Assembly (NCBI GenBank): GCA_904063045.1
Contig: CAJFCJ010000016.1
Span: 558,001 to 622,000 of the forward strand
Length of the DNA stretch: 64,000 nt
DNA from: Dimorphilus gyrociliatus
Taxonomy: Eukaryota; Animalia; Annelida
Reading direction: 5' to 3'
Position numbers and translations under genes: made by a program. Below, piece by piece: positions 14,730 to 33,091 of the stretch. How positions within the stretch are numbered: the first letter of the stretch is position 1; each line of letters begins with the position of its first letter. The notes beneath the pieces were generated by a model. That model was given only the letters and a program-made list of their open reading frames with translations, had not been told where the DNA came from and did not search any database.

Positions 14730-15869
14730 ATGTTATACTTAATAATTCTAACAGTTATTTTGATAATTATCCTTGTGGGTTTATTAAAATTTGCTAGATC
14801 ATTGGTTATAAGCAATTTAAAAGATAAATGGGTATTAATTACTGGATGTGATAGAGGTTTTGGTAAAATTACAGCTCTTCAGTTAAATGATATGAATGTT
14901 GGCGTAATAGGTTGTTGTTTGACTAAAGAAGGTGCTGATTTCCTAAATAATAAAGGAATAAAGGCAATTTGTTTAGACGTAACAAACGAGGAAAGTATTA
15001 ATAATTGTTTTGAAGATGTTGTTAAAATTATTGGAGAGGATAAAGGTCTTTGGGCTATTATTAATAATGCAGGTATAGCTACAGTTTGCGGTCCAACTGA
15101 ATGGCTAAATGGAGATGATTTTAGAAAACTTTTCGAAGTTAATACGTTAGGCGTTATAAATATGACAATTAAATTACTACCATTAATTAAAAAGGCAAAG
15201 GGTAGAGTTGTTAATATGGCAAGTATGTTGGGTAGATGCGGTCAACCGTATGTTGGACCATACGTTGTTTCCAAATTTGCTGTAGAAGGTTTTACAGATT
15301 CTTTAAGGTATAGATATTCTTACCATTTCATTCTAAAAATAATCACGGAACTAAGTTAATATTTAAGATAAAAATAGCTACATACTGTATAATTATTACC
15401 AAGAATTCCGTTAATTCAGACGGGAAATGGCGATTTGGAATGTATCTGTTCATACCATTGAACCTGGATACTTTTTAACTAATATCGTTGATTTTGAAAA
15501 GTACGCCTATAAACAATTCAACATTCAACCGAAGGAGATGCAAGAAATGTATGGTAGAGATTTCTTGGAAGACTGTAAATATAAGATAATAACTTTTAAT
15601 TAAAATGAATTCATTAACTTACACCATTAGGGATTCAAAGTGGAAGACAATTCATCAAGGACAATTGTAAATCGGATCTTAGCCCTGTAATAAACGCCTA
15701 CGTTCATGCAACAACAGCCAAATTCCCAAAAAGTCGCTACGTTGTTGGCGGGGATGCGAAATTTTTAACATTTTTAGCATCTCACCTACCTGATTTTGTT
15801 CTGGATGCTGTTTATGAGAAAATTTTGAAAAGAGATGGCCGAATAAAACCAAAAGCTGTTAGAGAATAG
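14730..15869 (+). CDS. Short-chain dehydrogenase/reductase, SDR9C (RDH16/HSD17B6/DHRS9-like), 323 aa
   Basis: Exons 14730-15307, 15420-15574, 15631-15869 (972 nt). N-terminal hydrophobic anchor, TGCDRGFG, NNAG, YVVSK, IEPG, RYVVG. Confidence 0.9.
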
Positions 15870-16340
15870 ATCATAAAGTAAATTATGTATAGAATTGAAA
15901 CGATATTTTTCAATATTCAATACAAAGATAATGAATTAATAATTAGTTTGTAATAAATTAATTTTACTTAGCTGATATCTCTTGCTACTTTTCAAATAAT
16001 TTTTGAACGATGCTAAAAATTACGAAGCTGTTTCTTCAACAAATATTTACACAACTTCTCTTTCTAGACTTTGAAATGAATGAACAGAATTACAAAGATT
16101 AAATATTGAATTAATATAAAAGAGAATTTCATATATAATAAAAAAGTCTTTATAGACGTTTTTCTCTTTTTAAAGTGATGTTTGTTTAATTTCAATAATT
16201 ATGGGAATATTCTTATTGAATTGACTCTTATACACAGATAAAGCTTGTTCAGCTATTTCTACACTTGTATATAAGCTCGGAAAACTGGAATGAAAATTCA
16301 TTCCGGTGGCTGATAACCATTCAATCAGTTACCTGTAACC

Positions 16341-19300
16341 ATGAGAACAGTCTTTGTGACTTGCTCTCTTGCTTTACTCGTAGTATTCATATCGTCTGCT
16401 TGTAAGTTGTTCATTTTCATTCAATGGTAAAAAGATATTTATGAAATTTTCTATTCGTTTTAGGTGGTCTAACCTTCAAGAATGCATGCGAATCTTCGAC
16501 TATGCAGATAGCGTGTCCTGAAGGCACAGTCATTTCTATAAACCAAGCCCAATATGGAAGACCAAGATATGATTTGCATACGTGTTCCAATTCTAACTTG
16601 CGCTCCCGTTCCGTGATCAAAAGAGTGAAAAAAGCTCATTGTGGAGCACGATCTTCAATGTTCCAGGCACGAAGACACTGTAATGGAAAATCTTCATGCA
16701 GTATTAGGGCAACTAATAGTGTGTTTGGAGATCCTTGCCGAGGAATTTATAAATTTTTAATGATTGGATATATATGCAGACCAAGTTAGTTAGCTATTTA
16801 TTCAATTAATTAAGTCATACTTTTAAACTTTCATAACAAAAGGGCAACACTGGAGACGAGTTTGTGAGCATCAAAAACTTCGCTTATCATGCCCACAGGG
16901 CTCAGTCATTCAAGTTCATCATGCATTATATGGTAGAGCCAGAGGAGATATGACAACATGTGGAAATAACAAACATGTATCAAAAAAAGGACAAAAAATC
17001 ATGGCTGGTCACTGTAAATCCAGAAAATCTGTTCATAAAGTCGTAGTAGCTTGTAATGGAAAAACAAGTTGTAGTATTCGCGCCTCAAATGGTATCTTTG
17101 GCGATCCCTGTCGTGGAATCTTTAAGTATTTGGAGGCTTCATTCGTTTGTCTCGCTGGTATGTAATCCAAATCAAACATTCAATTGTTATTTAAACCTGC
17201 TTTCACTTTAAAGGTAACATCAGAGGATATGCAAAATTCGATGGCAAGGATTATACTGGCCACGATATTCGTCGAATTCCCAACTACAATATTCACCAAT
17301 GTGCTACTTTTTGCAATAGCAAATCTCGTTGTCAAGGTTTCGTAGTTATACCTAATACAAAAACCTGTTGGATAAAACGTGAAGCTAGAACTCTTGGATC
17401 ATCTTACAAAAGCCATTCAACTGCAGTGTTATACCTCAAACATCCACAATGTAAGTTAAAGTATTCTAGTAATCCTTTACTATAAACCTACAATCACTTA
17501 ATTGTATGCAGATGCCGTTCAAGGATATAGACAGATTCAGGGTAAAGATTATCCAGGATATGACATTCGTATGCACGAGAAATCTAATCCTCAAGAATGT
17601 GGTTTAAAATGTGACCAAGCATCAGGTTGCACAGGATTCTTATACCAATACACAACACGAAGATGTTGGGTAAAATCAAAAGCACGGTCAAATGATAGAA
17701 ATGTAAAAAATCTGTCTACTGGAGTTCTCTACATTAGACTTTTTACAGTCACTATTTCTGGTTATCGTCGTGAATTAGGCAAAACTATCCGAGGACACGA
17801 TCTTCACTGTTACGCAAATGTATCACCAATAGCTTGTGCTAACCGCTGCAGCGCTGAATTGAAATGCCAGGGAATAGCCTACCAGTGGCCTATAAAAAGA
17901 TGCTGTACAAAATTTTACGTAGCCTTTTCAGGATCAAACGTCAATAATAATTACAATACTGCTCTTTTTATGAAAAACTTTAACTGTAAGTATAATAGAA
18001 CAAGTATATCTTTTGCATACCGTAATATCTATCATTCAACAGTTAATATAAGGGGATACAACAAGATTAGCGAAAGGGACTATGTCGGTCATGATATTAA
18101 ACTCATTCCATATTCCAATCCTCAACTTTGCGGCCATGATTGTAATCTTAATAGTACATGTAAAGGAGTTGTTTATCAACATAGTACAAGACAATGCTGG
18201 CTCAAGTCTCAAGCGTTGACAACGGGATCTAATTATAAAAGATCATCTCGTAACATTTTGTACATAAAGAGAATAACAGGTTAATATATTATTACATGTT
18301 TTTAATAAGTCAATAATTCTTTACTTATGATTTTTCAGTATCCGTTAGTGGTTATACAAAATTTGATTTCAAAGATTCTACAGGATCTGACATTAAAGTA
18401 TTAAGAAATTCCAGTCCAGTATCATGCTCTGCCCGATGCGATTTCAATGCAAAGTGTAAAGGTTTCGTTTACAATTTTCATAATAGAAATTGTTGGCTGA
18501 AGAAGAGAATTAGAACTAGTGGATCAAACTTTAGATCAGTACGACACGGCGTAACTTACAAGAAAATTGTTAATTGTACGATTCTATTAAAATTCCTTGC
18601 GAATGATAAATAATCTAATGTTTTATTTTGCAGTGAGAGTTCCTACTTATGAAAGTTCTCCTAGAAAAATATATTCAGGTTTCAATATAAAATGCTACAA
18701 TGGAAAACTGCCACAAGCTTGTGCTCATGAATGTAATAAATTATTGGCTTGTCAAGGTATTTCATTCTTGATCGCATCTAAGCGTTGCTGTCTGAAAAGC
18801 GCTGTAAAATTCAGTGGACATTCATTTAGAGACAACGTAGATGGTGCAGTTTATATCAGACCAATCACTTGTAAGTGTTTTTCTTTCTATTTATTATTTG
18901 AAAATCATTAACTTTTCAACTTTATCTTTTAGACAACGTACATAGATTTACCAAATATTCTAATTCGCTCTATAAAGGACACAATATTAAACGTTTAGTG
19001 AACTCTAGTCCTCAACTCTGTGGTTTTGTATGTGCAAACAGTAGACAATGCCTTGGTTTTGTATATCAATCTAGTCAAAGATCTTGTTGGTTAAAATCAC
19101 AAGCAAAACTGTTGGATCCATACTACAAGAAGAACAACCGCTATGTTCTTTATATGAAACAAGTTACAAGTAAGCGTTAATGGAAGAAAATTATTTTAAA
19201 TAATCAAATAATACCGTTTTTTTATTAGTTCCAGTATCACATTATAAATATCACATGAAAAAGGATTATCCTGGATACGATTTGCAACACTATGAAGATT

Positions 19301-22300
19301 CTAGTCCAGCTTTATGTAAAGCAAAGTGTGAAGATAACGGCAGATGTATGGGTTTTGAATATGAAATAACCACTAGAAGATGTTGGATTAAATGGAAAGT
19401 TGCTGATAAAGGAAGAAATTTTAAAGCAATGAAAACTGGAATCCTTTACATTATGAAGAGTTAGTTTAATGATTATTCAATAAAAATGAAATATACTCAT
19501 GCTGTCTTATTCATTTCCAGCTGAACTTTCTGGATATGTACGCTACCCTGGAAAGGCTTATCTTCGACACAACTTAAGAGTATTACCAAACTCCAACAGA
19601 AGATCTTGCAGGAGATTGTGCAATAGAATGCCAAATTGTTACGGTTTTGTCTTTAAACTTGGAAACAGAAGATGTGAGCTTAAAGGAGAAATTAAAACAT
19701 ATGGACCAAGTTCAAGGACAAATTCTCTTGCAGAAGTTTATCTTAAGAAACGTACTTAACTAATTTGTAACTTTTTTGTTGAATATTTCAAAGTAATTTT
19801 CTGTTTTACAGATCTTACTTCTGGCTTTACTCGATTCCCTCAAAAGGATTTTCCAGGTCACGATTTGAAACATTACAAGAAATCAACCATTCAACTTTGT
19901 GCTCAATATTGCGAAAGCAATATACATTGTGTAGCCTTTGTCTATAATACTGCAAATCGTAATTGCTTTATTAAAAACCGAGGAAAATCATCAGGATCAA
20001 ACTTTGTTAATAGTAGAGATGGCGAACTTTTCATTAGAGAAAGTAAGAGCTTTTAATATAATATTCATTATTAAATTAGTTAATCTTCTACTTTTTCTCA
20101 TTCTAGACTCAGTTTCCGGTTATACTAGATACGAAAGAAAAGATTATCCCGGTTCCGATATTAGAAATTTCCCAAAAACAAACAGACAAACTTGCGGTAC
20201 TCATTGTAATAGAAATACTGCTTGTATCGGCTTTGTGTTCAATACTAAAACTAGTATGTGTTGGATTAAAAGACAAGCACAATCGTCAGGACCAAACTTT
20301 AAAGATCATGTGGATGGAGAACTTTTCATAGAGAATGGTATATTTTAGCTAATCAATTTTTATCAAATACATCAAAATTATCTTTTCTATCAATCCAGAT
20401 CTTGTTCATGGCTATAGACAATATCCAAGAAGAGATTATAGAAAGTCTGATATCAGAAAATTTACAAACTCAAACAGACAAGCTTGCGGAGATCATTGTC
20501 ATCGTAATAAACAATGTACTGCCTTTGTATTCAATATCCAAACTAGGAAATGCTATCTAAAGAAGAAAGGAGAACCACGCGGAAGAAATTTTGTAAGGAA
20601 TGCCAATAGTGAACTTTTCATTATGAATAGTTAGTAGAGAATCTTTATCTAATGTTCATTATAACATTATTAAATTTACATTCTATACAGATAACATTGC
20701 TGGATATGCACGTCATCCTAGAAGAGAGTATACAGGTTTTGCTCTAAGATCTTTTCCCAATTATAATAGATATGCTTGCGCAGAGGAATGTAATACAAAT
20801 TCTCTATGCGTAGCATTTGTCTACAATGTTCAAAATAGAAATTGTCACTTGAAATCTGTGGGAGAAACAAGAGGTACACGATTCATAAAAAGTGTCGCTG
20901 GAGAACTCTTTATCAAGACATCTTCCCGTAAGTCCTAACTTGCAAAATGAACTTCTTACTGAATTATAATCAAATCTATTAATAATTTTTAGGTTATGTC
21001 TCAGACTTTCGTCGTTACCCAAGAAAGGATTATGGTGGACATGATCTAAGATCATTCCCCAACTCCAATAGACAAACTTGCGCTCAGAACTGTCGTTTAC
21101 AAAATAACTGTGTTGGTTTTGTTTATAATGTTGCCAATAGAAACTGCTTTATTAAATACGAAGCAGAATCTCGAGGACCTAGATTTGCTAATAGTAAATA
21201 TGGAGATCTATACATCAGGAAATCAACTCGTACGAAAATTTAAAACTTTATATGAACATATGAATTATAAACAAATCTATTAATCTTTTTCAGGTAATCC
21301 CTTAGGCTTCAGTCGTTATCCAAGAAAGGATTATGGAGGATTCGATATAAAATCATTCCGTAAATCCAACAGACAGGCTTGCGCTCTGGAATGTCGTCGA
21401 AGATCAAACTGCGTTGCTTTTGTTTTCAACATCGTCAATCGAAAATGCTTTGTTAAGTACGAAGGAGAAGCCAGAGGATCTAGATTTGCTAATAATAAAA
21501 GAGCAGATCTTTACATAAGAAAAATCTCACGTTTGTATTTAAGTAGAATGAGAAAAGTAACAAAGTAGAATGAATTTTTGTTTTAAAAAATAGGTGAAAT
21601 ATCAGGCTATAAGAGATATCCATTAAAAACTTTCTCTACACGACAAATTGGAAGATATAACAAATTAAATAGAGCTAGTTGCGCAGTTAAATGCAATGGA
21701 AATCCAGATTGTGGATCATTCGTCTTTAATTTTGTGAATTTCCGTTGTTATCTCTTGGATAGTGGAGAAAATAAGGGACGTCGTTTTACTAAAAATAACA
21801 ACAATGATCTATTTATAAGGAAGTCTTCATGTAAGATTTTAGAATGTTATTTATTTTAACTAATTTCATTTTAATTTTTGAATAGACAACGTTCGAGGCT
21901 ATCATAAATTCATTGGAAGAGATTATCAAGGTCACAACCTAAAACACTACAGTAGATCGAACAGACAATCTTGTAGAAAGGCTTGTAATGCTCATATCGC
22001 TTGCGTTGGATTTGTTTACAATGTTGATAAGGGAGATTGTTGGATAAAAAGAGAACTGAAGACCACTGGACCAATGTTTACGACTTCTAAATTTGGTGAA
22101 GTTTATAAGAAATCAGGTGAGAACATTCAAAGAGGTCTATACTCTTCCAGAATATTATCAAACTTTTCTCTTTTTAACCTAGAATCCGTTTCCGGTTTTT
22201 CACGCTACCCTAGGAAAGATTTTCCTGGTTATGATATTAAAGATATTAAGAGAGCAACCAAACAACAATGTGCCACGGCATGTCTTGGCCTATCAAATTG

Positions 22301-25300
22301 TGCTGGATTCCAATATAACAGGACTGGATGTTGGCTAAAGAGACAAGTAAAAACCTCTGGACCCAATTTTAAACCTGCTAGAAATGGAGAACTTTTCATT
22401 TTAAATAGTATGCTATAACCTATATATATATACTATATTCATTAGAATTTCATTGTCTAAATTCTTTCTTTCAAAGCTCAAATCCATGGATTTACACGAT
22501 ATGTCGGAAGAGAATATTTACATAATACCATTAAGAACTTTGGAAATTCAAATAGACAAGCTTGCGCAAACCATTGTCATCAGAATATCCGCTGTGTAGC
22601 TTTTGTATTCCGTAAGAACAACCGATTGTGCCAAATCAAACGTTATGCATTGGCAAGAGGTAAAAACTTTAAACGCAACATCAAAGCAGAACTTTTCATT
22701 ATTAATGGTATGAAAGTATATTATTATAAATATTCATAAGGTGTTATTAAATTAAACTTTTTTATAAAGGTGCCATTTCCGGATATAATAGACATGCAAG
22801 AAAAGATTATGCACTATTTGATATCGCCAGGTTCAGAAACTACAATAGATATGCTTGCAGTAAACAGTGCGATAAAAGTCAAACATGTGTAGCATTTGTC
22901 TATAATATTGTCAATAGAAACTGTTTTATTAAGTTTCAAGGAGAATCAAGAGGATCAAACTTTAAGACTAGTAAATATGGAGAACTTTTTATCAAGAGAT
23001 CATCTCGTAAGTAATAGATTCTCCACAAAAAAACATTTAATATTAAACCTTTTAAACAGGAGCTGTCCCCCGTTACGCGAGATATGTACCAAAGGATTTT
23101 CCCGGATTTGATATTGGAAAATATTCAAAATCTACTAGACAGTCTTGCGGAAGAATATGCAATAGAAACAGCGCTTGTGTAGCATTTGTTTACAACGTTG
23201 AAAATCGAAATTGCTATATCAAAAATCGAGGAGAATCAAGAGGATCAAACGTTAAGACTAATAACCATGGAGAACTTTTTATTAAGAGATCATCTCGTAA
23301 GCAATGGATTCTCCAAAAATAACATTTAATATTAAACCTTTTAAACAGGTGTTGTGTCCCATTATGCGAGATATGTAGCAAAGGGTTACCCAGGATTCGA
23401 TATTGGAAAATATTCAAAATCCACTAGACAGTCTTGCGGAAGAAGATGCAATAGAAACAGCGCTTGTGTAGCATTCGTTTACAATATTGAAAGTCGAAAT
23501 TGCTATATCAAAAATCGAGGAGAATTAAGAGGATCAAACGTTAAGACTAATAACCATGTGGAACTTTTCATTAAGAGATCATCTCGTAAGCAATGGATTC
23601 TCCAAAAATAACATTTAATATTAAACCTTTTATACAGGTGTTGTGTCCCATTATGCGAGATATGTAGCAAAGGGTTACCCAGGATTCAATATTGGAAAAT
23701 ATTCAAAATCCAATAGACAGTCTTGCGGAAGAAGATGCAATAGAAACAGCGCTTGTGTAGCATTCGTTTACAACATTGAAAGTCGAAATTGCTATATCAA
23801 AAATCGAGGAGAATCCAGAGGATCAAACGTTAAGACTAATAACCATGGGGAACTTTTCATTAAGAGATCATCTCGTAAGCAATGGATTCTTCAAAAATAA
23901 CATTTAATATTAAACCTTTTATACAGGAGTTGTCCGTCATTACGTGAGATATATCGGAAAGGATTATCCCGGATTCGATATTAAAAAATATTCAAAATCT
24001 ACTAGACAGTCTTGCGGAAGAAGATGCAATAGAAAAAGCGCTTGTGTAGCATTCGTTTACAACATTGAAAATCGAAATTGCTATATCAAAAATCGAGGAG
24101 AATCCAGAGGACCTAAGTTTAGAAATACTGTCGATGGGGACTTATATATTAAACAATCATCTCGTAGGGACATATTAAATTTAAAGTAAAATCTTTTTAA
24201 ATAATAAATTTTTGTCAATTTAGGTAATCTTCCAAACTATGAGCGATATCCAAGAAGATATTACCGTGGCAATAATATTAGAACATTCCGTAACTTAAAT
24301 AGAAGGCGCTGCGGTCGTAAATGTGATCAAGAACCAAGATGTGTATCATTTGTCTATAATATAGAAAATAGAAATTGTTTATTGAAGCACGCTGGTAAAG
24401 CTTCCGGACCTCAATTTAAAAGACATTCAGATAGAGATTTTTATCTTCGTAAAATAAGTGGTAATAATTAGAATAGCGTCATAAAAAATACATATTAATA
24501 AAAAATATTTAATATTAGCTGCCAGACCTACAACTACTCCCATGCCAACAACAGAAGCTACCACGACGAAAGCTACTACTCCATCAGCAGAAAGTACAAC
24601 AAAAACTACCTCTCCAGAACCAAACAGTAGAGAAACAGAAACATCCACTCTAGAACCAGAGAGTACTGAAACTGAAGCTCCATCTGCAAAACCCCAAAGT
24701 ACACCAACAGAAACTGCCACTTCAAAACCAGAAAGTGCTGAAACAGAAGCTACCACTCCTGAAACAGAAACTACTGAAACAGAAGCTCCATCTGAAAACC
24801 CCGAAAGTACTGAAACAGAAGCTCCATCTGAAAAACCAGAAATCAGTGACACAGAAGCTACAACTCCAGCACCCGAAAGTGATGAAACAGAAGCTCCATC
24901 TGCAAAACCAGAAAGTACTGAAACAGAAGCTCCATCTGAAAAACCAGAAGTGAGTGGCACAGAAGGTACAACTCCAGCACCGGAAAGTGATGAAACAGAA
25001 GTTCCATCTGCAAAACCAGAAAGTACTGAAACAGAAGCTCCATCTGAAAAACCAGAAGTGAGTGGCACAGAAGCTAGAACTCCAGCACCCGAAAGTGATG
25101 AAACAGAAGCTCCATCTGCAAAACCAGAAAGTACTGAAACAGAAGCTCCATCTGAAAAACCAGAAGTGAGTGGCACAGAAGGTACAACTCCAGCACCGGA
25201 AAGTGATGAAACAGAAGTTCCATCTGCAAAACCAGAAAGTACTGAAACAGAAGCTCCATCTGAAAAACCAGAAGTGAGTGGCACAGAAGCTAGAACTCCA

Positions 25301-28147
25301 GCACCCGAAAGTGATGAAACAGAAGCTCCATCAGCAAAACCAGAAAGTACTGAAACAGAAGCTTCATCTGAAAAACCAGAAGTGAGTGACACAGAAGCTA
25401 CAACTCCAGCACCGGAAAGTGATGAAACAGAAGTTCCATCTGCAAAACCAGAAAGTACTGAAACAGAAGCTCCATCTGAAAAACCAGAAATCAGTGACAC
25501 AGAAGCTACAACTCCAGCACCGGAAAGTGATGAAACAGAAGTTCCATCTGCAAAACCAGAAAGTACTGAAACAGAAGCTCCATCTGAAAAACCAGAAATC
25601 AGTGACACAGAAGCTACAACTCCAGCACCGGAAAGTGATGAAACAGAAGTTCCATCTGCAAAACCAGAAAGTACTGAAACAGAAGCTCCATCTGAAAAAC
25701 CAGAAATCAGTGACACAGAAGCTAGAACTCCAGCACCGGAAAGTGATGAAACAGAAGTTCCATCTGCAAAACCAGAAAGTACTGAAACAGAAGCTCCATC
25801 TGAAAAACCAGAAGTGAGTGGCACAGAAGGTACAACTCCAGCACCGGAAAGTGATGAAACAGAAGTTCCATCTGCAAAACCAGAAAGTACTGAAACAGAA
25901 GCTCCATCTGAAAAACCAGAAGTGAGTGGCACAGAAGCTAGAACTCCAGCACCCGAAAGTGATGAAACAGAAGCTCCATCAGCAAAACCAGAAAGTACTG
26001 AAACAGAAGCTTCATCTGAAAAACCAGAAGTGAGTGACACAGAAGCTACAACTCCAGCACCGGAAAGTGATGAAACAGAAGTTCCATCTGCAAAACCAGA
26101 AAGTACTGAAACAGAAGCTCCATCTGAAAAACCAGAAATCAGTGACACAGAAGCTACAACTCCAGCACCAGAAAGTGATGAAACAGAAGCTCCATCTGCA
26201 AAACCAGAAAGTACTGAAACAGAAGCTCCATCTAAAAAACCAGAAATCAGTGACACAGAAGCTACAACTCCAGCACCAGAAAGTGATGAAACAGAAGTTC
26301 CAAATGCAAAACCAGAAAGTACTGAAACAGAAGCTCCATCTGAAAAACCAGAAGTGAGTGACACAGAAGCTACAACTCCAGCACCGGAAAGTGATGAAAC
26401 AGAAGTTCCATCTGCAAAACCAGAAAGTACTGAAACAGAAGCTCCATCTGAAAAACCAGAAATCAGTGACACAGAAGCTACAACTCCAGCACCAGAAAGT
26501 GATGAAACAGAAGTTCCAAATGCAAAACCAGAAAGTACTGAAACAGAAGCTCCATCTGAAAAACCAGAAATCAGTGACACAGAAGCTACAACTCCAGCAC
26601 CCAAAAGTGATGAAACAGAAGCTCCATCAGCAAAACCAGAAAGTACTGAAACAGAAGCTTCATCTGAAAAACCAGAAGTGAGTGACACAGAAGCTACAAC
26701 TCCAGCACCGGAAAGTGATGAAACAGAAGTTCCATCTGCAAAACCAGAAAGTACTGAAACAGAAGCTACAACTCCAGCACCCGAAAGTGATGAAACAGAA
26801 GTTCCAAATGGAAAACCCGAAAGTACTGCAACAGAAGCTCCATCTGCAAAACCAGAAGTGAGTGACACAGAAACTGCCACTCCAGCACCCGAAAGTGATG
26901 AAACAGAAGTTCCAAATGCAAAACCCAAAAGTACTGCAACAGAAGCTCCATCAGCCAAACCAGAAGTGAGTGACACAGAAGCTACTACTCCAGCACCGGA
27001 AAGTGATGAAACAGAAGCTCCATCTGCAAAACCAGAAATGAGTGACACAGAAACTGCCACGCCAGAACCAGAGACTGCGACTGCGTTTATCCCATCGGAA
27101 ACTGCTACTCCCCGTACGATAGAAACTACTATTTCAACAGAAAGAATTGTTGTAACAAAGGCAACTAATATCAATGATCCTGCTGAAGATGGTGCTGTCG
27201 AGAAGGGTGAAATATTTGTTGAAGGTGGTGATATCCATCGTCAGCCTTCAAAACCTTTAGGAATGGGAAATACTGTTGTTGCTGACGATGACATATATGT
27301 GTCTAGTTCGAGACGTGGACATTCGAAAACCGAAGTGAGACCCGATGGAAAGTCATGGATTCCTAAACGAAAAGATAGACAGCCAGCTATTGCTATTGAT
27401 TTTGGTAGTATTGTTGATATCACTAGCATGAAAATGTCTGGCGATGGTTCTAATAGATGGATATCTAAATTTAATCTCTTTGTGTCTATTAATGGTGATG
27501 AATTCCAACATTTGCTTAAGGATAAAGCAGGAAATTCTGATGGAACTTCATCAAAGCTGATTGATTTTACGCAAGAGACAGGGCAAGTTTTATCCACAAG
27601 GTGGTTGAAAATTATGCCAGTCGAATGGGAAAACAGTCCTGCTCTGAAAGTCGAGTTTTATGGATTCAGAAGAGAAGATGATCCCAATTTGTTGAGAGTT
27701 TTGAGAGAAGATGAATGGACAAAGAATATTACTGGGTGCCCTTGTGTAGGAGAAAAAGATCAAAATAAAAAGAGATGTGCCTGCTGCAATCCAGGTGGCT
27801 GTCAATGTGCTAATTACAAACATCAATGTGTCAGATGTGATCATCCAGATGAATGTGGAAACCCAAGAGCATTACCAAAAGACGAAGTAGACGCCTGGAC
27901 AAAATCACTTAGTGGATGTGAATGCAGCTTTGATAAAACTCGTAAGGATTGCGCTTGTTGCAAGAACAAAGGATGTCAATGTGGTAAAGAATCCCAACAC
28001 CAATGTGTTGCTTGCGGAGATGTATACTCGTGTGGAAGAATCCGAACTGATATATTCAAGCCAAATTATTGTGTTCAAAGCAAATGCAATAAGGATTCTA
28101 TGAAAATGCCAGGAAATTTTAGGTCTTGGTCATATACAAAGAATTAA
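16341..28147 (+). CDS. Giant secreted multi-lectin mucin-like protein, about 3398 aa: SP + 2 SUEL + 25 PAN/apple + PTES repeat stalk + F5/8C + 2 Cys-rich repeats
   Basis: 28 exons, all internal junctions phase 1: 16341-16401, 16464-16784, 16843-17157, 17214-17450, 17512-17985, 18043-18279, 18339-18575, 18634-18870, 18933-19169, 19229-19459, 19521-19751, 19812-20042, 20107-20337, 20399-20629, 20691-20927, 20993-21229, 21294-21530, 21594-21830, 21886-22116, 22183-22407, 22477-22707, 22770-23006, 23060-23296, 23349-23585, 23638-23874, 23927-24163, 24224-24460, 24519-28147. Sum 10197 nt with no internal stop found. Signal peptide MRTVFVTCSLALLVVFISSA; no TM or GPI tail. Confidence 0.88.
16464..17157 (+). 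other. Two SUEL (rhamnose/galactose-binding lectin) domains
   Basis: CE..(L/I).CP.G..I......YGR ... C.GK.SCSI.A.N..FGDPC.G..K(F/Y)L in both exons. Confidence 0.9.
17214..24460 (+). repeat. Array of 25 PAN/apple (PAN_4-like) domains, one per 225-237 nt exon (domains 2 and 3 share one exon)
   Basis: Repeated GY.R(Y/F)..KDYPG.DI....S...C.3.C.5.C..FVYN.....C.(I/L)K.....G......GELFI pattern. Confidence 0.88.
23060..24163 (+). repeat. Recent tandem duplication of exon+intron units, 289-bp period (PAN21-24)
   Basis: Exon starts at 23060, 23349, 23638, 23927; the 52-nt introns are nearly identical (gtaagcaatggattc...aaacctttta(a/t)acag). Confidence 0.93.
24851..27060 (+). repeat. Coding minisatellite, 108 bp / 36 aa, about 21 units (TEATTPAPESDETEVPSAKPESTETEAPSEKPEISD)
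   Basis: Unit starts at 24851+108n up to 26687, then one 72-nt unit and units at 26759, 26867, 26975. Confidence 0.95.
27245..27667 (+). other. F5/8 type C (discoidin) domain
   Basis: PLGM...SS....H....R.....W......P.I.IDFG......I....G.....W...F......G......GN.D..............R..KI.P..W......KVEFYG. Confidence 0.8.
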
Positions 28148-28907
28148 GTTAGAAGTTTTTGACGAATTTTCAATCTATTGTACTTCTTCAATTTATTGTT
28201 AACCATCACATATTTATTAATACAAAATGCAATTATTAAAAATGAATTTAGCGTTCAATTATTTCTACTATTGAAAAATAGAAGAAATTTTATCAATGAC
28301 AGATAAGGTAGTAGGTAGGAGCTGAGAAAGGACAGAGAGTGAGAGAGAGAGAGTTTAGAACAAGCAGTCAAAGTACATTTGTTCAATATGTAGCTCTTTT
28401 TAAAGGTGAATAAATAAGGAAGTTAGATGATTAGAACATAATTATTTTAACGCTTTATCAACCTAATAACAATTAACAATATTTTTAGTAATTAGTTTAT
28501 TAAAGTAGTTGATTAATTATTTTATCTGACAAATTATAAAGTACTATATTTAGGTATGGATAATTATAGTACTATCCTATAATAATAATAATTACAAATA
28601 TAATATAACACATTCTTATACCTTTAGCAATAATAATAAAAAAAAACACAGTCTACCCTTTTATCTACAGATTAATAGAGTAAATAGTTGTTAGTACTGT
28701 TATTGCAGAAAGTAATTGAATAGTATGAATAAACAATCTAGAAACACTATTCAATACAGCGTAGGTCTAAACCATTAAGAGAAATTAACAATGATAAAAC
28801 ATATAATTTATATAAAAATATTTATACAAGGCCATCATCATTTAAGTATATAACAAAGTGTTTAAATTAGTTGATGGTGAAGGGATTGTCTTTTATTTAG
28901 ACTAGAT

Positions 28908-30117
28908 ATGAGACAGATAGTGTTTTTATATTCAGTCCTTATTTTGATACAATACTTTAGTATACAAAGTAAAATATTAATTAATTATTACTAATGTTAT
29001 TGAATAAATTCTAATTGTTGATATAGCAATTTAAGAAACCAATTGAAAGTACTTTTTACATAGGAATTTATAATAAATCAATATAACAATTAGAAATTAT
29101 CCATAATACTAAAGAATCTTATCAATAGAAATGTAATGTTTCGAGTTAAATAGATGCTGAAGTAACGGATGAACTGGACAATGAATTACTACTCCAAGAG
29201 TTGGATCGTCGAAATGTGAAAAGATCGCCATGTTAGATAAAACAACTCTTCTATTTTCATTAATAATATCAAAGCTACTCTTTTCATAACAGATGACGTT
29301 CCGGGATATGATAGATATCCTAATAGAGATTATTATGGATTCGATATTCAGAAATTCGAAAATACAGACAGACATAGTTGTGCGGAAGAATGCAACGAAC
29401 TGTCAGAATGCAAGGCATTCGTTTTCAATAAGATAAATACTTGTTTTATAAAGACTAGAGGAAGTACAAGCGGTGCGCCATACATGAAGAATAACTTTGG
29501 AGAATTATTTATTAAAAGAACTGGTAGTTAATTGAATATTTCATGAATTCATTAATGAAAATATTACTATACAATCAACAGACGAAATTATTGGCTATAC
29601 TCATTATCCAAAAATGGATTATAATTTACACGACATTAGAAAATTAGTAAATTCTAATCCGCATGACTGTGCGGATGAATGTAATGATGAGCCGAAATGT
29701 AAAGGAATTGTCTTTAACATTTACAATAAATATTGCTATCTTAAACACGAAGCTAAACCGGAAGGAAAATACTTTCTTAACAATCACGCTGGACAATTAT
29801 ATATAAAAGATAGTATATGTAATTTATTAAATATCTTCATATGTCATCAGTTTAATTGCTCTTTTTAATATTCATTAGATGATGTTGATGGATTTAACCG
29901 TTACGAAGGTAGAGATTTTTGCGGAAAGAGTTTTGAAACATTTCACGAAATTGACAGGGAAGATTGCGGTGCTTTATGTAAAAGTTCTGTAAAATGTCAA
30001 GGATTTGTATTTGTTACAATGGTGCAAAAATGTTGCTTAAAGAGTGTAGCTAGAACCTATGGTGAAAACTTTAAAGAAAATCCAGATACAGACTTTTATA
30101 TTAGGGCAAAAGCTTAA
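28908..30117 (+). CDS. Small secreted pre-pro-protein with 3 PAN/apple domains, 279 aa
   Basis: Exons 28908-28968, 29154-29231, 29293-29523, 29582-29812, 29879-30117 (840 nt). Signal MRQIVFLYSVLILIQYFSIQ, acidic pro-piece ending RRNVKR. Confidence 0.8.
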
Positions 30118-30742: not shown

Positions 30743-31215
30743 AAGAATCAGCAATACCCAAAGAACCCATTAAATCAGAGGAAACTTTAAAACCAGAAGA
30801 ACTAACTAAACCGAAGGAAGCCAATAAACCAGAAGAACCAACTAAAGCAGTTGAATCTTCAAAACTGAAAGAATTAAACAAACCAGAAGAAATTTTAAAC
30901 ATAGAAAAACCAAAAACATCCTGTTTTTTACAGATAAAACAAATATTTCAAAAAAATCAAGTTTTTCTATCGCTTTTGTTTGTTCACGTTTGATGAAACT
31001 GATTGTTGGTCTGAAGTTTGAAGATATTGTGAACGGAATTAAACATTTGAAGCAAAAAAAGACAGCTAGGCATTTTAGGAGAAGTAGAAGAATGAAAACA
31101 GTTTGTGAACATGATATATTGAAAATGAGATGTCCAGAAAAGAGTATTATCTTTATTTTAAGAGTCTTTCATGGAAGATAGAAGGAAGATTTAGACACTT
31201 GCAATCGAAAGTCAC
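30743..31215 (+). pseudogene. Degenerate lectin-gene relic: KPEE-rich segment plus truncated SUEL N-terminus
   Basis: KTVCEHDILKMRCPEKSIIFILRVFHGR*KEDLDTC parallels RRVCEHQKLRLSCPQGSVIQVHHALYGR; in-frame TAG; different frame from the upstream KPEE segment. Confidence 0.65.
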
Positions 31216-31514
31216 TTAAGATGTGACTTAAAGCTGTTTAAAATGATAGACGGATAAATTTAGATACTTTTCAAATAATATCAGAGGATAATTCTTTATA
31301 TATTTTTAATGAGCGCTGGTTTCTTTGAAATTGATGACATTTCTAATGACTAACAAAGTTCATATTGGCTGAAAAATTTTTGTGTTTAACTGTATTATTC
31401 AAAATTCAAGGAAAAAAGTTTAGCTATAGATTTACATTGTAGTTCCAAATCGTCTTTTCGCCAGTCTTCAAATGATCTTACTGGATGCAATTTGATTTAT
31501 TTAAAAAAAATGTT

Positions 31515-32511
31515 TTAATCACTGGATTCATCATCGTCATCTAATGAATATTAAAAAGAGCAATTAAACTGATGACATATGAAGATATTTAATAAATTAC
31601 ATATATTATCTTTTATATATAATTGTCCAGCGTGATTTTTAATAAAGTATTCTCCTTCCGGCTTAGCGTCGTGTTTAAGATAGCAGTATTTAGTGTAAAT
31701 GTTAAAGACAATTCCTTTACATTTCGGCTCATCATTACATTCATCCGCACAGTCATGCGGATTAGAATTTACTAATTTTCTAATGTCGTGTAAATTATAA
31801 TCCATTTTTGGATAATGAGTATAGCCAATAATTTCGTCTGTTGATTGTATAGTAATATTTTCATTAATGAATTCATGAAATATTCAATTAACTACCAGTT
31901 CTTTTAATAAATAATTCTCCAAAGTTATTCTTCATGTATGGCGCACCGCTTGTACTTCCTCTAGTCTTTATAAAACAAGTATTTATCTTATTGAAAACGA
32001 ATGCCTTGCATTCTGACAGTTCGTTGCATTCTTCCGCACAACTATGTCTGTCTGTATTTTCGAATTTCTGAATATCGAATCCATAATAATCTCTATTAGG
32101 ATATCTATCATATCCCGGAACGTCATCTGTTATGAAAAGAGTAGCTTTGATATTATTAATGAAAATAGAAGAGTTGTTTTATCTAACATGGCGATCTTTT
32201 CACATTTCGACGATCCAACTCTTGGAGTAGTAATTCATTGTCCAGTTCATCCGTTACTTCAGCATCTATTTAACTCGAAACATTACATTTCTATTGATAA
32301 GATTCTTTAGTATTATGGATAATTTCTAATTGTTATATTGATTTATTATAAATTCCTATGTAAAAAGTACTTTCAATTGGTTTCTTAAATTGCTATATCA
32401 ACAATTAGAATTTATTCAATAACATTAGTAATAATTAATTAATATTTTACTTTGTATACTAAAGTATTGTATCAAAATAAGGACTGAATATAAAAACACT
32501 ATCTGTCTCAT
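31515..32511 (-). CDS. Inverted paralog of the small PAN gene, 2 PAN domains (possibly a pseudogene)
   Basis: Exons 32511-32451, 32265-32188, 32126-31896, 31837-31607. The last donor is mutated GT>AT; the protein ends by read-through (stop at 31551) or via a cryptic donor and a short exon 31540-31515. Confidence 0.65.
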
Positions 32512-32662
32512 GTCTAGTCTAAATAAAAGACAATCCCTTCACCATCAACTAATTTAAACACTTTGTTATATACTTAAATCATGTTGGCCTTGTATAAATA
32601 TTTTTATATAAATTATATGTGTTATCATTGTTAATTTCTCTTAATGGTTTAGACTTACGCTG

Positions 32663-33091
32663 GATATCACCACCTTCAACGAATATTTTACCATTCTCTA
32701 CAGCACCATCTTCAACAGGTTCCTTGATATTAGTTGCCTTTGTTACAACATTTCTTTCTGTTGAAATAGTAGTTAATATCGTACTGGGATTAACACAGTC
32801 GTAGTCACTGATTCTGGGGTGGGAGTTGCTGTTGCAGTTCTTTCTGGTTGTGAAGTGGCAGTTTCTGTGTCAATCATTTCTGATTTTGCAGATGGAGCTT
32901 TAGTTTCATTACTTCCTGGTTCAGGAATGGCAGTTTCTGTGTCACTGATTTCTGGTTTTTCAGATGGAGCTTCTGTTTCATCACTTTTAGGTTCTGGAGT
33001 TGTAGCTTCTGTGTCACTCATTTCTGGTTTTGCAGATGGAGCTTTTGATTCTTCACTTTCAGGTTCTGGAGTTGTAGCTTCTGTGTCACTC
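32663..33091 (-). pseudogene. Diverged relic of the giant gene's stalk end (72-bp units plus TTISTER...EGGDI)
   Basis: Reverse complement matches about 26975-27237 with substitutions and a frameshift near LIPVRY*; no start or upstream exon seen. Confidence 0.8.

What the first reader, a model, noticed from the sequence alone, without database searches (positions are those of the whole stretch)
16341..28147. Giant 3,400-aa secreted lectin-mucin carrying three different glycan-binding folds and 25 apple domains
Seen: signal peptide, 2 SUEL, 25 tandem PAN/apple domains, about 900 aa of Thr/Ser/Pro/Glu stalk, a discoidin domain and two Cys-rich repeats, with no membrane anchor. The ORF track shows only fragments because of 27 tiny introns. 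Known: SUEL domains bind rhamnose/galactose (the E, YGR, N, DPC and K motif residues are present); 4-Cys PAN/apple modules are glycan-binding adhesins in apicomplexan MICs and oomycete CBEL; discoidin and SUEL domains occur in echinoderm adhesive and lectin proteins. I know no described protein with this architecture. Inference: a high-avidity polymeric mucus, adhesive, cocoon or microbe-trapping component.
Basis: partly seen in the sequence, partly recalled or inferred. Interest (0 to 1): 0.9.

Follow-up and report, generated by a model that had tools for sequence, protein, structure and literature searches.

The report
Giant secreted lectin-mucin of a miniature annelid
This is a real, expressed 28-exon gene of the tiny marine worm Dimorphilus gyrociliatus encoding a 3,398-residue secreted protein that strings sugar-binding modules onto a long acidic mucin stalk; it is already in public databases as an unnamed predicted protein, is probably a matrix, mucus or cocoon cross-linker, and is unusual in its make-up rather than new in kind.

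Summary
An independent splice model gives 28 exons, 27 GT..AG introns of 52-69 nt and 3,398 aa. It is letter-for-letter identical to the public protein DgyrCDS10690 of Dimorphilus gyrociliatus. Order of parts: signal peptide, 2 SUEL lectin domains with the Glu/Asn/Asp sugar ligands kept, 25 PAN modules, about 820-875 aa of acidic Thr/Ser/Pro/Glu repeats, a discoidin domain without its usual disulfide, and two 10-Cys modules. There is no membrane anchor.

Spliced contigs from two runs use the predicted introns. One 5.6-kb contig runs from the 5'UTR through at least 17 PAN modules. The PAN-to-mucin joint was not seen in RNA here.

The mucus, cocoon or microbe-trap reading is plausible but untested. 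"Polymeric" has no support: no VWD, CTCK or ZP domain and no odd cysteine.

Additions:
- The N-terminal 2,190 aa carry net +277, the stalk -175.
- Discoidin plus the 10-Cys pair is a conserved C-terminal cassette. The 10-Cys pair also ends nemertean and mollusc proteins and matches no Pfam family, PDB sequence or solved fold.
- A SUEL-PAN paralog and small PAN genes exist in the same genome.
- Comparison with a related lineage gives pN/pS of about 0.8.

No other protein with this architecture was found, and no paper mentions the gene. It is a new variant of known kinds, of moderate interest.

The parts
16254..16340 (+). 5' untranslated region (minimum extent)
   Evidence: The spliced X2 contig begins at or before 16254. 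The upstream dehydrogenase-like gene ends near 15869.
16341..16401 (+). Exon 1: start codon and signal peptide (aa 1-21), ends in phase 1
   Evidence: hydropathy 1.9-2.3 over aa 1-27. Intron 16402-16463 is confirmed by X2.
16464..16784 (+). Exon 2: SUEL lectin domain 1 (8 Cys)
   Evidence: Pfam PF02140 E 5.9e-19. Best solved relative is sea-urchin SUL-I 5h4s. Glu, Asn and Asp ligand positions are conserved (with PMC10377782).
16843..17157 (+). Exon 3: SUEL lectin domain 2 (8 Cys)
   Evidence: Pfam PF02140 E 4e-20. Joints on both sides are seen in X1 and X2.
17214..24460 (+). 24 exons encoding 25 PAN/apple modules (aa 234-2190). One module per 225-237-nt phase 1-1 exon, except exon 17512-17985, which holds two.
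   Evidence: Twelve of the joints in the 5' half are listed for X2, and most also for X1. Net charge +248, pI 10.
22886..24111 (+). Recent tandem amplification of the exon-plus-intron unit (289 nt x 4.2, 92% identical) covering PAN 20/21-24
   Evidence: TRF. Introns are nearly identical. pS is 0.03 between PAN22 and PAN23 and about 0.2 between PAN21 and PAN22/23.
24519..27145 (+). First part of the last exon: acidic Thr/Ser/Pro/Glu mucin-like stalk (aa 2190-3065), no Cys
   Evidence: Single 3.6-kb ORF. 36-aa repeat x22 at 24667-27052. 278 Ser+Thr in 875 aa. Net charge -175 over aa 2191-3010.
27299..27655 (+). Discoidin (F5/8 type C) domain, aa 3117-3235, lacking both flanking Cys
   Evidence: Pfam PF00754. 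Aligns to neuropilin b1 and factor VIII C2, with Ser and Phe where their Cys lie. No Cys in aa 3066-3249.
27710..27859 (+). 10-Cys module 1 (aa 3254-3303)
   Evidence: Model pLDDT 87. No Pfam, PDB-sequence or fold match.
27890..28036 (+). 10-Cys module 2 (aa 3314-3362)
   Evidence: Same evidence as module 1.
28037..28147 (+). Hydrophilic C-terminal tail with a conserved PN-YC-x4-C motif (2 Cys), then the stop codon
   Evidence: No hydrophobic or GPI-like end.
28409..28414 (+). Candidate AATAAA polyadenylation signal
   Evidence: Read from the sequence. Not verified by reads.

Best explanation
One gene of the annelid Dimorphilus gyrociliatus (public id DgyrCDS10690) is transcribed and spliced into a single mRNA. 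The product is a 3,398-aa secreted protein with no anchor.

I read it as a long multivalent cross-linker of a secreted extracellular gel: the surface or trail mucus, or the egg-cocoon matrix.

Proposed working:
- The two SUEL domains bind terminal galactose- or rhamnose-type sugars.
- The 25 strongly basic PAN modules bind matrix or polyanionic glycans with high avidity.
- The roughly 850-aa acidic, probably O-glycosylated stalk acts as an extended hydrated spacer.
- The C-terminal discoidin plus 10-Cys cassette gives a second attachment or assembly end.

Shown: the gene structure, splicing of the 5' half, the domain content, conservation of the lectin ligand residues, and the absence of an anchor. 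Inferred: O-glycosylation, the ligands of PAN, discoidin and the 10-Cys modules, the gel-cross-linking role, and the tissue.
For: - Model and annotation are identical.
- Spliced contigs from two runs use the predicted introns.
- Pfam domains lie above their cut-offs.
- The SUEL Glu/Asn/Asp ligand positions, YGR and DPC motifs and 8 Cys are kept in both domains.
- The stalk is 47.5% Pro+Thr+Ser in 22 repeats.
- The signal peptide is the only hydrophobic segment.
- LET-653 gives an experimental precedent: its PAN domains tether a mucin-like protein to a loose fibrillar luminal matrix in a region rich in chondroitin proteoglycans (PMC4970718).
- SUEL-type and FA58C lectin-domain proteins occur together with glycosylated mucin-like proteins in sea-star and Hydra secretions (PMC9382459; PMC5080974).
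- The C-terminal cassette recurs in secreted proteins. One from a nemertean follows VWD-C8-TIL. The 10-Cys pair alone ends mollusc VWDE-like proteins.
Against: - No expression site or stage is known.
- No glycan binding has been measured.
- PAN ligands are heterogeneous across families (protein, heparin, galactose).
- No recognised polymerisation domain is present.
- pN/pS of about 0.8 against a related lineage fits an immune or reproductive protein at least as well as a structural one.
Confidence: 0.6

Rival explanations
1. It is a humoral or mucosal immune agglutinin. The lectin modules recognise microbial glycans such as rhamnose-containing LPS or LTA, and the giant chain traps or agglutinates microbes instead of building the matrix.
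For: - The SUEL domains are closest to rhamnose-binding lectins of sea-urchin venom and fish eggs.
- The genome paper says the few expanded families in this species are mostly locally duplicated immune genes (PMC7854359).
- There is a local cluster of paralogs.
- Protein evolution is fast, with 30 nonsynonymous against 10 synonymous differences.
Against: There is no effector or signalling module. An 850-aa mucin stalk and 25 PAN modules are not typical of known recognition lectins. This reading also overlaps with mucus function, so the two are hard to separate.
Confidence: 0.2
2. It is a temporary-adhesion or egg-attachment glue protein. The oppositely charged blocks and the lectin ends give cohesion and surface binding, as in duo-gland adhesives.
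For: Lectin-domain proteins (D-galactose-binding, FA58C) combined with glycosylated mucin-like proteins are found in sea-star footprints, and rhamnose-binding lectins are enriched in the Hydra basal disc. The charge blocks are +277 and -175.
Against: No adhesive organ expression is known. The protein lacks VWD/EGF, DOPA-type or Lys/Gly-rich motifs of known glues. The neuromuscular-development paper I searched mentions ciliary-band, flask-shaped and pharyngeal glands but neither 'mucus' nor 'adhesive'.
Confidence: 0.1
3. The single 3,398-aa product is an annotation fusion or a precursor. Either the mucin-discoidin exon belongs to a separate transcript, or the chain is cut at basic linkers (KRSSR-type, between PAN 13-25) into smaller units.
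For: - The 24460/24519 joint was not observed in RNA here.
- Several linkers fit a minimal R-x-x-R motif.
- Small PAN-only genes exist next door.
Against: - The intron is only 58 nt and keeps phase 1.
- The last exon has no start codon with a signal peptide of its own.
- The same run X2 holds 70% of the words of the 3' half.
- The public annotation is identical.
- The basic linker motif is missing from PAN 1-12, and the array is 19% Lys+Arg anyway.
Confidence: 0.07

Closest known systems
SUEL-type rhamnose/galactose-binding lectins (sea-urchin SUL-I, PDB 5h4s; salmon egg CSL3, 2zx0)
   Same: Two tandem domains with 8 Cys each, the YGR, DPC and KYL-type motifs, and the Glu/Asn/Asp residues that hydrogen-bond rhamnose in SUL-I.
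   Different: Those lectins consist only of 2-3 SUEL domains (195-284 aa). Here the pair is the tip of a 3,398-aa chain, and each domain has a basic insertion in the variable loop.
C. elegans LET-653 (PAN domains + mucin-like linker + ZP domain), an apical extracellular matrix protein
   Same: It is secreted, has N-terminal PAN modules followed by a mucin-like region and then a C-terminal assembly or attachment domain. Its PAN domains tether it to a loose luminal matrix (PMC4970718).
   Different: LET-653 has PAN domains (2, from memory) against 25 here. The protein here has no ZP domain but adds SUEL, discoidin and 10-Cys modules.
Gel-forming mucins (MUC2, MUC5AC, VWF-like)
   Same: A large secreted protein with a long tandem-repeat Pro/Thr/Ser domain flanked by Cys-rich globular ends.
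   Different: No VWD-C8-TIL assemblies and no C-terminal cystine knot. The stalk is unusually acidic (24% Glu). The C-terminal end is a discoidin plus 10-Cys pair instead.
Multi-apple adhesins of apicomplexans (MIC4-type) and other PAN-array proteins
   Same: Tandem PAN/apple modules in a secreted protein. The comparison is from memory and was not tested here.
   Different: 4-Cys modules in 23 of 25 cases. The array is far longer, strongly basic and combined with other lectin folds.
Sea-star footprint proteins and Hydra basal-disc lectins
   Same: Galactose-binding (SUEL-type) and FA58C modules in secreted material that also contains glycosylated mucin-like proteins.
   Different: In those systems the lectin and mucin parts sit on separate proteins and often come with VWD and EGF. 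Here they are on one chain and joined to PAN modules.
DgyrCDS14582 (P0154), paralog in the same genome
   Same: Signal peptide, SUEL and PAN modules, 29% identity over 81% of the first 1,000 aa.
   Different: Only 893 aa, arranged SUEL-PAN(about 7)-SUEL-PAN2, with no mucin stalk, discoidin or 10-Cys modules.

Membership tests
SUEL / rhamnose-binding lectin domain (PF02140) | Profile match above the curated threshold | tested here: met
   68.7 and 72.4 bits against a cut-off of 31.4.
SUEL / rhamnose-binding lectin domain (PF02140) | Eight Cys per domain, with the YGR and DPC motifs | tested here: met
   8 Cys in each of aa 23-128 and 129-233. The motifs are aligned to SUL-I and CSL3 for domain 1. 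For domain 2 they are read from the translated model.
SUEL / rhamnose-binding lectin domain (PF02140) | Sugar-ligand residues (Glu7, Asn71, Asp76 of SUL-I domain 1) | tested here: met
   The aligned positions keep Glu, Asn and Asp in domain 1 (residues from PMC10377782). Domain 2 shows the same CE...SNGIFGDPC pattern in the translated model.
SUEL / rhamnose-binding lectin domain (PF02140) | Measured rhamnose or galactose binding | not testable with these tools
   Needs recombinant protein.
PAN/apple domain (PF00024, PF14295) | Profile match and conserved Cys core | tested here: met
   PAN_1 496 bits in 22 stretches. All 25 modules have the 4-Cys core.
PAN/apple domain (PF00024, PF14295) | Six-Cys 'apple' pattern (three disulfides) | tested here: not met
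   Only modules 3 and 6 have 6 Cys. The other 23 have 4.
Gel-forming mucins | Long Pro/Thr/Ser tandem-repeat domain | tested here: met
   820 aa with 47.5% P+T+S, in 22 repeats of 36 aa.
Gel-forming mucins | VWD-C8-TIL assemblies and a C-terminal cystine knot for polymerisation | tested here: not met
   No such Pfam hits in P0002 at E <= 0.001.
Membrane-tethered mucins | Transmembrane helix or SEA domain | tested here: not met
   No hydrophobic stretch apart from the signal peptide. No SEA hit.
Discoidin / F5/8 type C domain (PF00754) | Profile match above threshold | tested here: met
   37.9-41.3 bits against 28.2. Neuropilin and factor VIII hits.
Discoidin / F5/8 type C domain (PF00754) | Disulfide joining the N- and C-terminal ends of the domain | tested here: not met
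   Ser and Phe sit at the aligned Cys positions of neuropilin-2. There is no Cys in aa 3066-3249.
ZP-domain apical matrix proteins (LET-653-like) | ZP domain | tested here: not met
   No ZP hit.
Spiralian 'discoidin + 2 x 10-Cys' C-terminal cassette (unnamed) | Discoidin, a conserved linker, two modules of pattern C-x-C...C-x-C-C...C-x-C...C-x-x-C...C, and a PN-YC tail at the C-terminus | tested here: met
   32-42% identity to six of the seven other cassette proteins in the alignment, and 25% to P0045, which keeps only the first module. The module pattern is present in 65 of the 150 best hits, mostly within about 40 aa of the C-terminus.

The most novel reading that the evidence does not exclude
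The protein may be a single-chain block polyampholyte. A +277 lectin/PAN block and a -175 mucin block would condense on each other (self-coacervation), allowing dense packing in secretory granules and rapid swelling or gelation on release. Under this reading the conserved spiralian 10-Cys pair, a fold with no solved or catalogued relative, would be the assembly or dimerisation module, taking the place of the cystine knot of vertebrate mucins. That would be a new way of building mucus or glue, and a new extracellular assembly domain.
Probability: 0.15. Interest if true: 0.7.

Novelty: new variant of a known kind. Interest (0 to 1): 0.45.

Why it matters
Invertebrate mucus, cocoon and adhesive matrices are poorly understood at the molecular level. 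This protein places on one chain what other animals spread over several proteins: lectins and a mucin.

It comes from a laboratory-culturable annelid with a compact, well-annotated genome, so in situ hybridisation, knock-down and proteomics are practical.

Its C-terminal 10-Cys pair matches no Pfam family, solved sequence or solved fold that I could search. The same pair also ends nemertean and mollusc secreted proteins, so its function is of wider interest than this one gene.

The exon-per-domain, phase 1-1 array with copies 92% identical is also a clear example of ongoing domain amplification.

Tried and rejected
- Literature. A first search on 'SUEL, PAN, discoidin, mucin' was swamped by pancreatic papers. 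Searches for the gene ids found no paper. The supplements held for the genome paper and the annelid life-cycle paper do not mention the gene or its Pfam ids. No expression stage or tissue could therefore be obtained.\n- The ESM Atlas look-up of the Cys-rich end gave only weak, unrelated rows.\n- Fold searches of the 10-Cys pair gave nothing significant: Foldseek PDB best E 0.7, AlphaFold clusters best E 0.12 with TM <= 0.24, VIA-align wide with no match at Z >= 2. A tandem two-module query may hide a single-module match.\n- The whole-cassette model was mediocre (pLDDT 66) and was not searched.\n- Spliced PAN25/mucin junction. A 30-mer had no match in metagenome contigs. A 20-mer hit one contig of a rodent-associated metagenome, but its flanks do not match, so it is a chance hit.\n- The 915-aa antisense ORF at 24427-27174 is a by-product of the repeat. 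Its translation is low-complexity Ser/Gly/Val/Ala, so I rejected it as a gene.\n- Polyprotein cleavage at basic linkers: considered and judged unlikely (see rivals).\n- The Pfam accession PF26386, listed among the precomputed hits for P0002, could not be identified. It is not in the local Pfam copy, and it is absent from P0001, which has the 10-Cys pair, so it is probably not that module.
Full report
**What is there**

The bacterial-style ORF list shows only fragments between 16.3 and 24.5 kb, followed by one 3.6-kb ORF at 24542-28147. The sequence has GTAAGT...AG introns of about 60 nt between the fragments.

A splice-site script starting at the ATG at 16341, refined for two in-frame introns, gives these results:
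- 28 exons and 27 GT..AG introns of 52-69 nt (median 60).
- A stop at 28145-28147 and a protein of 3,398 aa.
- Every internal exon starts and ends in phase 1.
- All PAN exons but one are 225-237 nt and encode exactly one PAN module.

The model is identical, residue for residue, to a protein returned by the library search, P0002. Its sources name it DgyrCDS10690 of Dimorphilus gyrociliatus. It is annotated at the same coordinates on contig CAJFCJ010000016.1. The window therefore comes from this miniature annelid, whose genome paper reports a 73.8-Mb genome with a median intron of 66 bp (PMC7854359).

**Transcript evidence**

Two runs hold spliced copies.
- X2 (coded organism A, 2017) contains a 5,558-nt contig identical to the window. 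It starts at 16254, upstream of the ATG, and skips the predicted introns, including 17986-18042. It runs past the end of the laid stretch at 22240. This is signal peptide, both SUEL domains and at least 17 PAN modules on one molecule.
- X1 is a coral-tank metatranscriptome with contigs mostly 95-99% alike. It has a 761-nt contig joining SUEL2, PAN1 and PAN2, and others joining later PAN exons at the same joints.
- The DNA run X3 carries the stretch unspliced.
- X2 also holds 70% of the sampled words of 22300-28200.

I infer that joint from four points:
- the 58-nt intron;
- phase continuity across it;
- the lack of any start codon with a signal peptide in the last exon;
- the identical public model.

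**Domains**

- SUEL_Lectin x2: 68.7 and 72.4 bits against a cut-off of 31.4.
- PAN_1/PAN_4: 22 scored stretches. Exon structure and Cys pattern give 25 modules, 23 with four Cys and two with six.
- F5_F8_type_C at aa 3117-3235.

SUEL domain 1 aligns best with the three domains of sea-urchin SUL-I (5h4s) and with salmon CSL3. The residues reported to hydrogen-bond rhamnose in SUL-I are Glu7, Asn71 and Asp76 (PMC10377782). These are conserved, as are YGR, DPC and eight Cys per domain. Domain 2 shows the same pattern in the translated model.

The discoidin domain aligns to neuropilin b1 and factor VIII C2. It has Ser and Phe where those proteins have the disulfide-forming Cys, and there is no Cys at all in aa 3066-3249.

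The stalk is a 36-aa unit repeated 22 times at 92% DNA identity. Its composition is T 18%, S 13.5%, P 16%, E 24%, with no Cys.

The only hydrophobic segment is the signal peptide, and the C-terminal tail is hydrophilic. The product is therefore secreted and not anchored.

First, the chain is a charge block copolymer. Residues 1-2190 carry net +277 (pI 10), and the stalk carries net -175 (pI 4).

Second, the two Cys-rich repeats belong to a widespread but uncatalogued module.
- A search of 1.84 billion representatives with the last 333 aa gave 302 hits.
- 65 of the best 150 carry the pattern C-x-C...C-x-C-C...C-x-C...C-x-x-C...C. It usually occurs as a pair and mostly within about 40 residues of the C-terminus.
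- The whole 'discoidin + linker + two modules + PN-YC tail' cassette is conserved at 32-42% identity in six of the seven other proteins I aligned. The seventh, P0045, keeps only the first module, at 25%.
- One cassette protein is from the nemertean Tubulanus, where the cassette follows VWD-C8-TIL.
- The module pair alone also ends VWDE-like proteins of Haliotis and Ruditapes.
- The pair models confidently (pLDDT 87).
- It matches no Pfam family, no PDB sequence and no fold in PDB or AlphaFold clusters.

**Relatives and evolution**

- With the first 2,190 aa as query and candidates of 1,870-5,950 aa, only the protein itself was found.
- With the first 1,000 aa, the only hit was a paralog in the same genome, DgyrCDS14582. 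It has 893 aa, arranged SUEL-PAN(about 7)-SUEL-PAN2.
- The large hits of the C-terminal search have other architectures.
- Downstream in the window lie two small annotated PAN-only genes in inverted orientation, a SUEL fragment with an in-frame stop, and a partial antisense copy of the stalk-to-discoidin boundary.
- PAN modules 21-24 with their introns are a recent tandem amplification: 289-nt unit, 92% identical, pS 0.03 between PAN22 and PAN23.
- Among paralogous PAN exons, pN/pS is 0.3-0.8.
- Of the 40 listed differences between the reference and the X1 lineage, 30 are nonsynonymous and 10 synonymous, giving pN/pS of about 0.8. There are no stops, and both changes at Cys codons are silent.

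The protein is constrained in frame and Cys scaffold but evolves fast. The sample is small, and it is the subset the tool chose to display.

**How it probably works**

The anatomy is two sticky ends separated by a long, probably O-glycosylated spacer.
- N-terminal end: 2 SUEL plus 25 basic PAN modules.
- C-terminal end: discoidin plus the 10-Cys pair.

This fits a multivalent cross-linker or tether in a secreted gel. Precedents:
- LET-653 uses its PAN domains to bind a loose luminal matrix in a region rich in chondroitin proteoglycans (PMC4970718).
- Sea-star and Hydra secretions combine SUEL-type or FA58C lectin-domain proteins with glycosylated mucin-like proteins.

D. gyrociliatus lays its eggs in cocoons and has ciliary-band, flask-shaped and pharyngeal gland cells (PMC5101659). 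No data link this gene to any of them.

Rival readings are an immune agglutinin and an adhesive. The genome paper says the few expanded families in this species are mostly immune. The fast evolution fits immunity or reproduction as well as structure.

'Polymeric' is unsupported. No VWD, CTCK or ZP domain is present, and every domain has an even Cys count. Cys21 could stay unpaired if signal-peptide cleavage falls after Ala20, which I could not test.

**Novelty**

The gene is publicly annotated but unnamed, and I found no paper that mentions it. I found no other protein with the same combination of domains. All the folds except the 10-Cys module are well known, and giant mosaic secreted proteins are common in invertebrates.

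Unchecked notes of this scan describe many other PAN and SUEL arrays in the same genome. One of them, a 'SUEL lectin fused to a 25-domain PAN chain' on another piece, may be this same gene read again.

I rate it a new variant of known kinds, interest about 0.45.

The most novel reading still open is self-coacervation of the two charge blocks, with the 10-Cys pair as an assembly domain.

Noticed in passing
window 28908-30117 (+) and 31515-32511 (-): Two small annotated PAN-only genes (281 and 210 aa) lie in inverted orientation just downstream. They are paralogous to the giant gene's PAN modules and form the inverted repeat noted by the scan as s1-082827.
   Followed up: partly
window 31095-31220 (+): A SUEL-like coding fragment with an in-frame stop right after the degenerate YGR position (reads FHGR). 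It is probably a pseudogenised exon.
   Followed up: no
window 32642-33021 (-): A partial antisense-strand copy of the stalk repeats, followed by 37 aa that are 78% identical to the stalk-to-discoidin linker of the giant gene. This looks like segmental duplication debris or part of a chimeric paralog.
   Followed up: no
window 16708-16748: A 41-nt piece of SUEL exon 1 (the CNGKSSC...FGDPC motif region) has a word depth of about 7,100 in DNA run X3, against about 240 for its flanks, with different flanking sequence. It is shared with one or many other SUEL genes or with a repeat.
   Followed up: no
window 24427-27174 (-): A 915-aa antisense ORF across the stalk repeat, translating to low-complexity Ser/Gly/Val/Ala. 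It is an artefact of the repeat, not a gene.
   Followed up: partly
run X1 (coral metatranscriptome) on window 16450-22240: A lineage mostly 95-99% identical to the reference D. gyrociliatus is transcriptionally active in a coral-associated sample. The worm, or a cryptic sibling, evidently lives in coral tanks or on reefs.
   Followed up: no
P0001 (711 aa, NCBI), P0019 and P0022/P0152 (mollusc VWDE-like), P0005 (Tubulanus): The 10-Cys module pair is a recurrent C-terminal end of otherwise unrelated secreted spiralian proteins (fucolectin-type F5/8C, D8C+VWD+EGF, VWD-C8-TIL). It matches none of the Pfam families I could search.
   Followed up: partly
window 13.4-15.9 kb and 7.4-10.8 kb: The upstream neighbours are a short-chain dehydrogenase-like gene (492 aa) and a carboxylesterase/cholinesterase-like gene (433 aa) on the same strand. 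They are unrelated to the lectin family.
   Followed up: no
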